Positions 13,936 through 14,601 of a stretch of 64,000 nucleotides of DNA are shown in pieces. The stretch spans positions 41,540,001 to 41,604,000 of the forward strand of contig NW_025963791.1 of the NCBI RefSeq assembly GCF_023055435.1. Direction: 5' to 3'. This stretch comes from Haliotis rufescens. Lineage: Eukaryota. A program made the translations under genes and the position numbers. Position 1 is the stretch's first letter. Each line of letters begins with the position of its first letter. The notes under the pieces are model-generated. The model was not told the origin of the DNA. It worked only from the letters and a program-made list of their open reading frames with translations, and searched no databases.

Positions 13936-14601
13936 ATGATGGCTAATAGAGGAAAGTCGTTTCACGTCGCTGGCAATCAGGAGAAGGAAGAGAACCTGTG
14001 CCTTGTAGTCCTTGGAGCCTCTGGAGTAGGCAAGACAACCATTATCTCTCAATTCCTGGACCACAATTCTATTACAGAGTATAAAGGAACGTTCGAGGAG
14101 ATCCACAGGTGCAAATACGACTCATCAGGATTGGACTTGACAGTAGAAATCGTGGAAATAATCAATGGGGATGCAGTTCCAACTGTAAGGAAGCAGGCTA
14201 TTGCAAAAGGGGATGCCTTTGTTCTCGTTTATTCCGTGGATGATGCCGACTCTTTTGAGCAAATTTACACCTTGCGAGATCTCATTCTGGAAGAAAAGAA
14301 GGAAATAAATGTTCCAATTTATGTGGTTGCCAATAAAATAGACATTGCAGAAGAAAGGAAGACACCCATCTGGCAGGTCGCTGATGCTATTGTGACAATA
14401 GATTGGGAGCACAAGTACTCTGAAGTGTCAGCTGAACACCCATCGCAGATTGCTGAACTATTTGGAAATGTTATTGCTTATGCTGTCTCAGTTTATAAGG
14501 AAAGGTTTGTAATGCAACCGAGACGAATGACAACGCCTGCGTATCTCTTCTCACTGATGAGGAAGAAGCTCTCTGCCAGGAGACAAAAATCAGCTTTTTG
14601 A
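13936..14601 (+). CDS. Ras-dva/RASD-like small GTPase, copy 1 (221 aa, intronless)
   Basis: G1 GASGVGKT, G2 EYKGTFEE, GDAFVLVYSVDDADSFE, G4 NKID, G5 EVSAE, IDW motif; start taken at MMANRG downstream of TATA. Confidence 0.88.
   Translation: MMANRGKSFHVAGNQEKEENLCLVVLGASGVGKTTIISQFLDHNSITEYKGTFEEIHRCKYDSSGLDLTVEIVEIINGDAVPTVRKQAIAKGDAFVLVYSVDDADSFEQIYTLRDLILEEKKEINVPIYVVANKIDIAEERKTPIWQVADAIVTIDWEHKYSEVSAEHPSQIAELFGNVIAYAVSVYKERFVMQPRRMTTPAYLFSLMRKKLSARRQKSAF

What the first reader, a model, noticed from the sequence alone, without database searches (positions are those of the whole stretch)
14130..14200. G3 (DxxG) motif destroyed in every visible copy: candidate pseudo-GTPase
Seen: VEIVEIINGDAVPTVRK. 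Ungapped alignment to the family pattern LDILDTSGxxxFPAMRK puts E-I-I-N at DxxG (Ras D57>E, G60>N, no Q61). G1 (GKT), G2 Thr and G4 NKID are kept, and G5 is SAE instead of SAK. Knowledge: D57 and G60 mediate Mg2+ and gamma-phosphate sensing; RGK proteins are a precedent for G3-altered Ras-like proteins acting as scaffolds. Inference: a nucleotide-binding but non-switching protein, for example a decoy, dominant-negative or scaffold.
Basis: partly seen in the sequence, partly recalled or inferred. Interest (0 to 1): 0.8.

Follow-up and report, generated by a model that had tools for sequence, protein, structure and literature searches.

The report
Abalone Ras-like genes without DxxG motif
A small tandem family of abalone genes encodes Ras-type proteins that keep their nucleotide pocket but have lost the conserved "DxxG" switch motif, making them well-conserved candidates for GTPases that no longer work as ordinary on/off switches.

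Summary
Window 14155-14169 encodes EIING where Ras-family proteins have DxxG plus residue 61. All 5 complete copies in the window, and 6 of 6 copies in the genome, carry it. So do orthologues named from Haliotis asinina and H. rubra. The genes have a single coding exon and descend from Rhes/RASD-type Ras GTPases. They have lost the CAAX box.

They are not decaying. Pairwise dN/dS among copies is 0.14-0.36 in 13 of 15 pairs. Codons 47-171, which include G3, have 0 nonsynonymous and 9 synonymous variable codons. The switch II segment is 95% identical across three species, against 77-82% overall. G1, the G2 Thr and G4 are kept.

The likeliest reading is a selected protein that binds nucleotide but is impaired in hydrolysis and switching (a pseudoGTPase by sequence). 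No biochemistry exists. A still-working switch that uses the neighbouring Gly78 is not excluded.

The case is not unique. Of 67 related uninterrupted Ras-like reading frames in this genome, 34 lack DxxG, with at least 4 changes of state on the tree. Earlier scan notes on this same window had already flagged the array and its Gly/Arg P-loop polymorphism. I rate it a new variant of a known kind, of moderate interest.

The parts
13871..13879 (+). TATA-like box (TATATATAA), about 32 nt upstream of an initiator-like TCAGAC and 57 nt upstream of the ATG
   Evidence: Sequence read. It is conserved in 5 of 6 copies; L006 has TGTATACATAA. Promoter function is my inference and was not tested.
13936..14601 (+). 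Copy 1: single-exon CDS of 221 aa plus stop, a Ras-family G domain with a basic C-terminal tail
   Evidence: ORF. Pfam PF00071 Ras, E 7.7e-23. Rap2A (PDB 1kao), E 2.8e-20. AF2 model has mean pLDDT 75.8, and Foldseek finds H-Ras 621p at E 4.2e-13 with target-normalised TM 0.84.
14014..14037 (+). G1 / P-loop, GASGVGKT (residues 27-34). Ras position 12 is Ser; position 13 is Gly in 2 copies and Arg in 4.
   Evidence: Arg at this position also occurs in canonical relatives, for example P0009, P0014 and P0023.
14068..14070 (+). Ser45 at the Ras/Rap Phe28 position (the guanine-stacking aromatic, by my recall)
   Evidence: The alignment to Rap2A pairs S45 with F28. The proteins named from H. asinina and H. 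rubra, and the DITKG paralogues, keep Phe.
14089..14091 (+). G2 / switch I Thr52 (Ras Thr35)
14155..14169 (+). Altered G3: E74-I75-I76-N77-G78 in place of D57-x-x-G60-(Q61)
   Evidence: Invariant in 6 of 6 copies.
14332..14343 (+). G4, NKID (residues 133-136)
14428..14436 (+). G5, SAE (residues 165-167). The H. asinina protein has SAK and the H. rubra protein SAR.
14521..14592 (+). C-terminal RRMTTP motif (residues 196-201) followed by a predicted basic helix (202-219). There is no CAAX box.
   Evidence: AF2 helix 202-219. The [RK]Rx[ST]xP motif occurs in 92 of 117 Rhes-type hits and 22 of 63 own-genome ORFs. A Cys at -4 occurs in 89 of 117 Rhes-type hits but only 4 of 63 own-genome ORFs.
18930..19595 (+). 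Copy 2, 221 aa, 99% identical to copy 1
23925..24575 (+). Copy 3, 216 aa. An earlier stop removes the last 5 residues. It also carries V11G and I46V.
   Evidence: dN/dS against copies 1 and 2 is 1.43, based on few changes.
53959..54624 (-). Copy 4, 221 aa
59993..60655 (-). Copy 5, 220 aa, with codon 16 deleted
63830..64000 (-). Copy 6: only the last 56 codons plus the stop lie inside the window. The rest, G3 included, lies beyond the window end.
   Evidence: The full copy was read as L005.

Best explanation
This is a Haliotis-restricted, tandemly amplified family of six genes, each with a single coding exon. It descends from Rhes/RASD-type Ras GTPases. The proteins are under purifying selection. 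They keep the parts of the G domain that hold a guanine nucleotide: the P-loop Lys/Thr, the switch I Thr, and NKxD. The G3 motif DxxG has been replaced by ExxN followed by Gly. As in the whole family, there is no catalytic Gln, and position 12 is not Gly. My inference is that the protein still binds nucleotide but hydrolyses GTP poorly or not at all. I also infer that it does not couple the gamma-phosphate to switch II in the canonical way. It would then act as a constitutive binding module. Its remodelled switch II would be a fixed, selected interaction surface. Control would come from expression and from the conserved C-terminal RRxTxP site and basic helix, which replace prenylation as the membrane or partner handle, rather than from a GEF/GAP cycle. 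Shown here: gene structure, copy number, motif states, descent, selection and fold. Inferred: nucleotide binding, lack of switching, and the mode of regulation.
For: Family and fold: Pfam Ras at 7.7e-23, and a Ras fold by AF2 plus Foldseek.

Descent: the best hits outside Haliotis carry LDILDTSG..FPAMR and mostly a CAAX box. The canonical own-genome relative L008 has orthologues across molluscs and arthropods, many of them named 'GTP-binding protein Rhes'.

G3: the alignment is ungapped with E at position 57 and N at position 60. This holds in 6 of 6 copies and in the H. asinina and H. rubra proteins.

Timing: the sister clade (P0004 and L007, motif DITKG) also lacks Gly60. The two clades join at SH-aLRT 98. 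H. asinina has both clades, so the loss predates that split.

Selection: there are 12 nonsynonymous and 11 synonymous variable codons overall, and 0 against 9 in codons 47-171. NG86 dN/dS is 0.14-0.36 in 13 of 15 pairs, and core dN is 0 with dS up to 0.106. The 3' flank diverges 6-10% between copies, except in the two closest pairs, against 1.2-2.9% for the CDS in those same pairs. Residues 74-92 are 95% identical in both other species, against 77-82% overall.

Pocket residues: G1, Thr52 and NKID are invariant.

Precedent: H-Ras G60A mostly adopts the effector-incompetent state 1, with drastically impaired GTPase (PMC4867591, passages read).

Possible transcription: small contigs lie on the CDS in 4 of 4 runs laid, but their RNA status is only a guess.
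Against: No biochemical or structural datum exists for this protein.

Gly78 directly follows Asn77. The nearest canonical paralogues read DT-x-GD, while this clade reads D/E-I-x-x-GD. A one-residue shift of the glycine, with the function kept, is therefore conceivable.

Asp to Glu is a conservative change.

RGK proteins also lack DxxG, yet they are listed as catalytically active (PMC5593906).

The H. rufescens copies have also lost Phe28 (now Ser) and the G5 Lys (now Glu). That could mean weak or no nucleotide binding.

One copy (copy 3) has an early stop and dN/dS above 1 against two others.

The protein named from H. cracherodii is a 130-aa fragment without a P-loop and reads EIINV. The H. 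rubra protein has an unrelated C-terminus.

The expression evidence is weak. The runs were chosen because they hold this gene, their kind is a guess, and depth is 2-7.5.
Confidence: 0.5

Rival explanations
1. It is still a working, if unusual, GTPase switch. Either Gly78 takes over the role of Gly60 (an ExxxG register with the loop length unchanged), or Asn77 supplies a carboxamide in place of the missing Gln. On this reading the protein cycles and hydrolyses, like class iii 'pseudoGTPases' such as RGK.
For: The Gly lies one position downstream. The loop between beta3 (66-75) and alpha2 (82-91) has six residues, which by my recall is the Ras length. The GD dipeptide is shared with the nearest canonical paralogues (DTEGD in L009, DTHGD in P0027). 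That fits an insertion plus a deletion rather than many substitutions. All base- and phosphate-binding motifs are kept under selection. RGK proteins lack DxxG but are listed as retaining catalysis (PMC5593906).
Against: Pairwise and profile alignments prefer the ungapped register, with high posterior. The sister clade has Lys, not Asn, at position 60, so a shared 'Asn in cis' mechanism is unlikely. Even the G60A change in H-Ras impairs GTPase activity and shifts the protein to state 1 (PMC4867591).
Confidence: 0.28
2. It is a nucleotide-free pseudoGTPase (class i). The pocket is already compromised in the H. rufescens copies, and the fold serves only as a binding scaffold.
For: All six H. rufescens copies have F28S, the G5 Lys changed to Glu, D57E and G60N, and four of six have Arg at position 13. 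Other arrays in the same genome have gone further, with the P-loop Ser/Thr changed to Arg, His or Leu and the switch I Thr lost.
Against: GxxxxGKT, Thr52 and NKxD are invariant, with zero nonsynonymous change in the core. That conservation would be unnecessary if no nucleotide were bound. Arg at position 13 also occurs in canonical relatives.
Confidence: 0.14
3. The copies are recently duplicated genes on their way to becoming pseudogenes, and the odd G3 is simply damage.
For: This is a tandem array among transposon remnants. One copy has an early stop and one lineage has a codon deletion. The H. cracherodii model is truncated.
Against: All six reading frames are open. dN/dS is well below 1 and is zero in the core. 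The altered G3 is identical in proteins named from three species, and Gly60 is also missing in the sister clade. Switch II is among the best-conserved segments.
Confidence: 0.05

Closest known systems
RASD1/RASD2 (Dexras1/Rhes) branch of the Ras family
   Same: The best relatives outside Haliotis carry the LDILDTSG..FPAMR switch II, lack Gly12 and Gln61, have an extended basic C-terminus, and mostly have an RRxSxP site. Several are named Rhes or Dexras1-like by their sources. The window protein keeps the Pro and Arg of the ..P..R. core and the basic tail.
   Different: DxxG is replaced by ExxN. There is no CAAX box. G5 is SAE. The genes form a tandem array restricted to Haliotis, rather than a single conserved orthologue. 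That orthologue is L008 on another contig, and it is canonical.
RGK proteins (Gem, Rad, Rem1, Rem2)
   Same: They are Ras-family proteins with a non-canonical G3 (DXWE), no CAAX box, a regulatory C-terminal extension, and doubtful nucleotide-dependent switching (PMC4081519; PMC11733253).
   Different: RGK proteins keep Asp57 and have Trp-Glu. The window protein has Glu57 and Asn60. No RGK chain is among the 60 best PDB sequence matches listed, and the nearest relatives are RASD-type. This is an analogy, not membership.
Rnd proteins and RhoH (class ii pseudoGTPases)
   Same: Their nucleotide pocket is kept and they are degraded near switch II. They bind GTP permanently without hydrolysis (PMC5593906; PMC11733253). 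This is the functional class I think most likely here.
   Different: They belong to the Rho family, and by my recall they keep DxxG. This was not tested here.
H-Ras G60A laboratory mutant
   Same: It is a replacement of the G3 glycine in an otherwise intact Ras. The protein mostly adopts state 1, and its intrinsic GTPase is drastically impaired (PMC4867591).
   Different: It is an engineered single change, whereas here the change is natural and selected. Here it comes with D57E, a Gly at position 61 and Ser at position 12.

Membership tests
Ras family small GTPase (Pfam PF00071) | Profile match above the curated cut-off, and a Ras fold | tested here: met
   81.3 bits against a cut-off of 21.6. 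AF2 model plus Foldseek gives H-Ras at E 4.2e-13.
RASD (Dexras1/Rhes) | P-loop GXXXXGK(S/T) (PMC3979064, passage) | tested here: met
   GASGVGKT or GASRVGKT.
RASD (Dexras1/Rhes) | DXXG motif (PMC3979064) | tested here: not met
   EIIN in 6 of 6 copies.
RASD (Dexras1/Rhes) | NKXD and EXSAK (PMC3979064) | tested here: inconclusive
   NKID is present. EVSAE stands in place of EXSAK in this genome. The H. asinina protein has EVSAK.
RASD (Dexras1/Rhes) | C-terminal CAAX box for prenylation (PMC3979064) | tested here: not met
   The protein ends ..RRQKSAF or ..RKQKSAF with no Cys. L008, the canonical orthologue, ends CSLN.
RASD (Dexras1/Rhes) | Extended cationic C-terminal region (PMC3979064) | tested here: inconclusive
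   A basic tail of about 35 residues with a predicted helix at 202-219. It is shorter than the 56-70 residues quoted for mammals.
RASD (Dexras1/Rhes) | Phylogenetic nesting within the family | tested here: inconclusive
   It groups with RASD-like sequences rather than with the Ras outgroup, but the deep forks are weak or open. No named vertebrate RASD or Ras-dva sequence was included.
PseudoGTPase | [quoted passage not shown] | tested here: met
   Ras fold with G3 absent.
PseudoGTPase | Class assignment: (i) no nucleotide binding, (ii) binding without catalysis, (iii) catalysis retained | not testable with these tools
   This needs nucleotide-binding and hydrolysis assays.
RGK | G3 is DXWE (PMC4081519) | tested here: not met
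   EIING.
Rap2 (the name given by NCBI's automatic annotation) | Rap-type switch II (DTAGTEQF) and a CAAX box, as in Rap2A | tested here: not met
   Rap2A is the best PDB match but only about 30% identical. The genome has its own Rap-type gene, L044 (DTAGTEQFASMRD, ending CSIL). 'Rap-2b-like' is therefore a naming artefact.

The most novel reading that the evidence does not exclude
Abalone carry a large, recurrently degenerating superfamily of Rhes-derived Ras-fold proteins. At least 34 uninterrupted reading frames lack DxxG, with at least 4 changes of state on the tree. In this superfamily the GTP switch has repeatedly been given up while the fold, a basic tail and tandem amplification are kept. 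The EIING array would be the earliest stage of that path: it still binds nucleotide, but its switch II is frozen into a selected, species-conserved interaction surface. It would then be a natural series showing how a Ras switch turns into a pseudoenzyme. The array structure would also fit a role in a fast-evolving conflict such as immunity or reproduction.
Probability: 0.2. Interest if true: 0.65.

Novelty: new variant of a known kind. Interest (0 to 1): 0.4.

Why it matters
Natural Ras-family proteins that lose the G3 glycine and change the Walker-B Asp, yet stay under strong purifying selection, are rare and useful test cases. They bear on how much of the 'loaded spring' a small G protein needs. 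They also bear on how pseudoGTPases arise, a question that PMC11733253 calls important and completely open. This genome offers graded stages in one family. There is a canonical Rhes orthologue, CAAX-less but canonical paralogues, this ExxNG clade with an intact pocket, and arrays that have also lost P-loop and switch I residues. Simple biochemistry on a few recombinant proteins could therefore map the path from switch to pseudoenzyme. Set against that, the family is restricted to one gastropod genus, nothing is known of its biology, and atypical G3 motifs already have precedents in RGK and similar proteins.

Tried and rejected
Cross-species codon analysis was planned from the coding DNA of the H. 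asinina and H. rubra orthologues. I used within-genome copies instead, plus protein-level conservation between species.

I tested a register shift that would place Gly78 at the canonical position, using a profile HMM of 110 canonical relatives. The profile kept the ungapped register. This weakens the shift reading but does not exclude it, because coordinates of the AF2 model cannot be inspected here.

I asked whether unnamed proteins with a one-residue deletion in G3 (P0042, P0095, P0106, P0136, P0126) are orthologues from other molluscs that share an ancestral loss. In the tree they form a separate clade. Their organisms could not be named. I treat this as an independent case.

The protein-atlas search gave only generic Ras-family neighbours. 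The bacterial promoter and terminator scan is irrelevant for a eukaryote and I ignored it. The Ras-dva literature search (listing and abstract starts only) was not followed up, so membership in Ras-dva as against RASD was not tested.

Paper searches for abalone/Haliotis combined with Rhes, RASD, Dexras or pseudoGTPase, and for Haliotis combined with Ras, GTPase and gene family expansion, listed no paper on this family among the 12 and 15 top rows shown. That is the only basis for saying I found nothing in print. No supplementary files were requested.

I rejected the 'decaying duplicates' reading on the selection data, and an assembly artefact because the motif recurs in other species' annotated proteins.
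Full report
WHAT IS THERE. The finding lies inside a 221-codon open frame at window 13936-14601 (+). EIING is encoded at 14155-14169. The protein matches Pfam Ras (PF00071, E 7.7e-23, 81.3 bits against a cut-off of 21.6). Its best solved relative is Rap2A (1kao, E 2.8e-20). An AlphaFold2 model built from a 15-row alignment has mean pLDDT 75.8 and pTM 0.69. In it beta3 spans residues 66-75, a loop spans 76-81, alpha2 spans 82-91, and a C-terminal helix spans 202-219. Foldseek places the model with H-Ras, M-Ras, Rap1 and Ral (best hit 621p, E 4.2e-13, target-normalised TM 0.84).

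THE MOTIFS. The HMMER alignment to Rap2A is ungapped from switch I to alpha3. It pairs E74 with D57, I75 with T58, I76 with A59, N77 with G60 and G78 with T61. A profile HMM that I built from 110 canonical relatives gives the same ungapped register with top posterior marks. G1 is GASGVGKT or GASRVGKT. The switch I Thr (T52), NKID and SAE are present. Ser45 stands at the Phe28 position in this genome only.

Among 166 aligned domain rows of the best database relatives, 142 read D-x-x-G in register, and only 6 have Gln at position 61. Position 12 is Ala, Ser or Pro throughout, and Arg at position 13 occurs in canonical members.

COPIES AND GENOME. The window holds five complete copies: 13936-14601 (+), 18930-19595 (+), 23925-24575 (+), 53959-54624 (-) and 59993-60655 (-). 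It also holds the last 56 codons of a sixth copy at 63830-64000 (-). Against copy 1 the other complete copies in the window are 96-99% identical as proteins, and all six copies carry EIING.

The window is G000:C13:41540001-41604000. Contig C13 is 45,695,856 bases long and contig C90 is 32,727,429 bases long. These are the lengths recorded for contigs that carry proteins named from Haliotis rufescens. The genome is therefore most probably red abalone; this is an inference.

Homology among all six copies is confined to about 135 bases upstream, the CDS, and about 306 bases downstream. A TATA-like box at 13871-13879 is kept in 5 of 6 copies.

RELATIVES. The word-indexed protein search found only Haliotis proteins at E below 1e-3, 7 hits in all. 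They include a 213-aa H. asinina protein (78% identical, EIING) and a 203-aa H. rubra protein (82% identical, EIING, with an unrelated C-terminus). There is also a 130-aa H. cracherodii fragment (EIINV, no P-loop) and a 219-aa H. asinina paralogue (53% identical, DITKG).

The exhaustive representative search gave 4,831 hits at E up to 0.001, but only 7 at E up to 1e-30. The best hits outside Haliotis carry LDILDTSG..FPAMR and mostly a C-terminal CAAX box. Their source names are mixed automatic labels, among them 'GTP-binding protein Rhes' and 'dexamethasone-induced Ras-related protein 1-like'.

The genome's own canonical member is L008 on contig C201 (DTSG, FPAMRK, ending CSLN). It has close orthologues across gastropods, bivalves and arthropods, many of them named Rhes. 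I therefore read the array as a derivative of the Rhes/RASD branch. NCBI's 'Rap-2b-like' label is a naming artefact, because the genome has a true Rap-type gene, L044.

DESCENT OF THE G3 CHANGE. I built a quick maximum-likelihood tree of 75 rows. I left out P0012, P0018, P0019, P0034, P0038, P0039 and P0045, and most near-identical own-genome copies. I used only the first 190 residues of P0011, as the outgroup. In this tree the EIING proteins form a clade (5 rows, SH-aLRT 99). That clade is sister to the DITKG proteins (2 rows, 98), and the two join at 98. The next neighbours are CAAX-less Haliotis paralogues with canonical G3, L009 and P0027 (DTEGD and DTHGD), at support 88.

H. asinina has both an EIING and a DITKG protein. 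The loss of Gly60 therefore predates that species' split from H. rufescens. The Asp57 to Glu change came afterwards in one daughter lineage.

L009 lies about 29 kb beyond the window on the same contig, with fragments of a family member beside it. This fits local duplication.

SELECTION. Among the six copies there are 12 nonsynonymous and 11 synonymous variable codons. There is also one in-frame codon deletion (copies 5 and 6) and one early stop that removes five residues (copy 3). Every nonsynonymous change lies in codons 7-46 or 172-216. Codons 47-171, which cover switch I, G3/switch II, G4 and G5, have 0 nonsynonymous and 9 synonymous variable codons. If at most about 35% of random changes were synonymous, nine in a row would occur with probability below 1e-4. 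That figure is my own arithmetic, not a tool result.

Nei-Gojobori dN/dS is 0.14-0.36 in 13 of 15 pairs. It is 1.43 in the two pairs of copy 3 with copies 1 and 2, based on very few changes. In the core, dN is 0 with dS up to 0.106.

Leaving out the two closest pairs (copies 1 and 2; copies 5 and 6), the first 300 bases after the stop differ by 6-10% between copies. The CDS differs by 1.2-2.9% in those same pairs.

Between species, residues 74-92 (G3 and switch II) are 95% identical in both the H. asinina and H. rubra proteins. The N-terminus is 38-52% identical and residues 162-187 are 54-62% identical. The altered switch II is thus one of the most constrained parts of the protein. That is the opposite of what decay predicts.

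EXPRESSION. One run search and one read-laying run were allowed. No listed holder of the stretch is on record as RNA. I laid four runs guessed to be RNA. Each has one small contig on the CDS: 13920-14427, 13988-14298, 14196-14441 and 14208-14427, at depth 2.2-7.5. One run has a further contig at 14645-14901, in the 3' flank, with 26 differences. None covers 13669-13869 or 14473-14606.

The differences from copy 1 in those contigs are states seen in other copies of the array, for example Arg30 and the codon-16 deletion. This is compatible with low-level transcription that starts near the predicted initiator. It is weak evidence, because the run kind is a guess and the runs were selected for holding this gene.

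MECHANISM. What is shown is a selected Ras-fold protein with intact phosphate- and base-binding motifs and a non-canonical G3. What is known from the literature I read is the following. The Gly60 amide hydrogen-bonds the gamma-phosphate, and H-Ras G60A sits mostly in the effector-incompetent state 1 with drastically impaired GTPase (PMC4867591, passages). PseudoGTPases are defined as GTPase folds lacking one or more G motifs. They fall into class i (no nucleotide binding), class ii (binding without catalysis, as in Rnd) and class iii (catalysis retained, as in RGK) (PMC5593906, passages and Table 2 text). RGK G3 is DXWE (PMC4081519, passage).

My inference is a class ii-like protein. It binds nucleotide, hydrolyses little or nothing, and has no canonical switch II spring. 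The conserved switch II would serve as a fixed interface.

Control by the tail is plausible. The [RK]Rx[ST]xP motif (RRMTTP here) occurs in 92 of 117 Rhes-type hits and in 22 of 63 own-genome ORFs. A CAAX-like Cys occurs in 89 of 117 Rhes-type hits but in only 4 of 63 own-genome ORFs. That this motif is a basophilic-kinase and 14-3-3-type site is my recollection and was not tested.

One pattern I noted without weighing it. The two positions that flank the gamma-phosphate changed together in both clades: Ser12 with Asn60, and Glu12 with Lys60. That is only two cases.

RIVALS. (1) The protein may still be a working switch. Gly78 follows Asn77, the loop length is unchanged, and the GD dipeptide of the nearest canonical paralogues is kept one position later. 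An insertion-plus-deletion history with a shifted glycine is therefore possible, and RGK proteins show that a lost DxxG need not abolish catalysis. Against it stand the ungapped profile alignment and Lys at position 60 in the sister clade.

(2) The protein may bind no nucleotide. F28S, the G5 Lys to Glu change and Arg13 in four of six copies point that way for H. rufescens. The strict conservation of GKT, Thr52 and NKxD argues against it.

(3) The copies may be decaying duplicates. This is contradicted by the selection data above.

THE WIDER PICTURE. The six-frame search of the genome gave 76 matches, most of them uninterrupted frames of about 200-316 codons. I read G3 in 67 distinct loci. These are the 30 loci plus 39 of the 40 fetched (L070 repeats L017), minus two fragments (L068, L069) that had no G3 region. 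Seven weak or partial matches were not fetched.

Of the 67 loci, 33 read DxxG and 34 do not. The 34 comprise the following:
- the six EIING copies;
- L007 (DITKG);
- nine copies in an array at C90:26.13-26.21 Mb plus L034 (all DTST) and L053 (DTSS), with P-loops GDSSVGK(S/L), GDRGVGKS (L034) or GDGNVGKS (L053);
- eight copies in an array at C90:25.36-25.51 Mb (EASSG, P-loop ending GVGK(R/H));
- L061 and L067 (KASS);
- L050, L051 and L054 (DVSP, with G4 also degenerate);
- L043 (HTAV), L033 (DTPVG) and L048 (an insertion).

On a 63-row tree the G3 state changes at least 4 times. That tree left out L017/L070 and L032, which are split by stops. It also left out L049 and L052, which are short, and L068 and L069, which are fragments. 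Loss of DxxG is therefore recurrent in this lineage-specific expansion, and the array of the finding is its most conservative instance.

VERDICT. This is a real, selected, genus-restricted derivative of the Rhes/RASD branch. It fails two defining features of that family, DXXG and CAAX. It meets the sequence definition of a pseudoGTPase, but its class is undetermined.

I rate it a new variant of a known kind, with interest 0.4. The biology is unknown and atypical G3 motifs have precedents. Even so, the combination of strong constraint on a remodelled switch II with a graded series of degenerate paralogues in one genome makes a tractable model for how Ras switches become pseudoenzymes.

Earlier scan notes on this same window (s1-807629 for the array, s1-807758 for the Gly/Arg polymorphism) agree with what I found and tested.

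Noticed in passing
G000:C90:26128553-26213963 (L038-L042, L045-L047, L059), plus L034 and L053 elsewhere on C90: An array of at least nine uninterrupted Ras-like reading frames of 230-246 codons. G3 reads DTST and the P-loop reads GDSSVGK(S/L); one copy (L059) reads GDSSEGKL. There is no switch I Thr, and G5 reads SAE. L034 (DTST, P-loop GDRGVGKS) and L053 (DTSS, P-loop GDGNVGKS) are related single copies. These are more degenerate than the finding's genes.
   Followed up: partly
G000:C90:25364649-25509264 (L056-L058, L060, L062, L063, L065, L066); L061 and L067 on C600: A second array of at least eight frames of 219-224 codons. G3 reads EASSG, that is Glu at position 57 and Ser at position 60 followed by Gly, which parallels ExxNG. 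The P-loop reads GGHGVGK(R/H), or GDHGVGKR in L060, so the Mg-binding Ser/Thr is lost. L061 and L067 read KASS.
   Followed up: partly
G000:C594 (L050, L051, L054); C1 (L043); C8 (L033); C124 (L048): Further single or small-group paralogues without DxxG: DVSP with G4 reading GHRVD or GYRVD, HTAV, DTPVG inside an otherwise canonical array, and one with a long insertion in G3.
   Followed up: partly
Proteins P0042, P0095, P0106, P0136, P0126 (unnamed Logan/ENA contigs of 1-2.4 kb): A separate clade of RASD-like proteins from unidentified organisms. They have a one-residue deletion in G3 and no Gly60 in register (for example LDT-GDYVVP and MEA-ENFLLP). They share the VADCVVTIDWE segment with the abalone proteins.
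   Followed up: partly
window 16163-17300 (-) and 21157-22324 (-): Paired ORFs in two successive repeat units. To me they look like the two halves of a Tc1/mariner-type transposase (recalled, not tested). They are part of the roughly 4,995-base repeat unit that separates copies 1, 2 and 3.
   Followed up: no
window 13401-13668 and 14875-15008: Short interspersed repeats flank copy 1. Summed contig depth reaches roughly 70,000-127,000 in all four runs laid, so they are very high-copy elements.
   Followed up: no
window 3421-4796 (+): A long tandem minisatellite that reads in frame as repeats of HITSLRWQGDKLF, a 13-codon period.
   Followed up: no
window about 30800-40400: About 10 kb of G/T-rich low-complexity sequence interrupted by N stretches. 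GC skew is 0.63-0.86 and very long spurious ORFs occur on both strands. The N stretches were left untouched.
   Followed up: no
window 46724-49121 (+): A run of ORFs of 135-238 aa that look like fragments of a non-LTR retrotransposon endonuclease and reverse transcriptase (recalled resemblance, not tested).
   Followed up: no
G000:C13:41633680-41633963 (+), beside L009 at 41632830-41633441 (-): Two fragments, 79% and 67% identical to residues 87-124 and 148-204 of the window protein, one of them with a stop. They lie next to the nearest canonical paralogue, about 29 kb beyond the window, and are likely a dead copy marking where the array arose.
   Followed up: no
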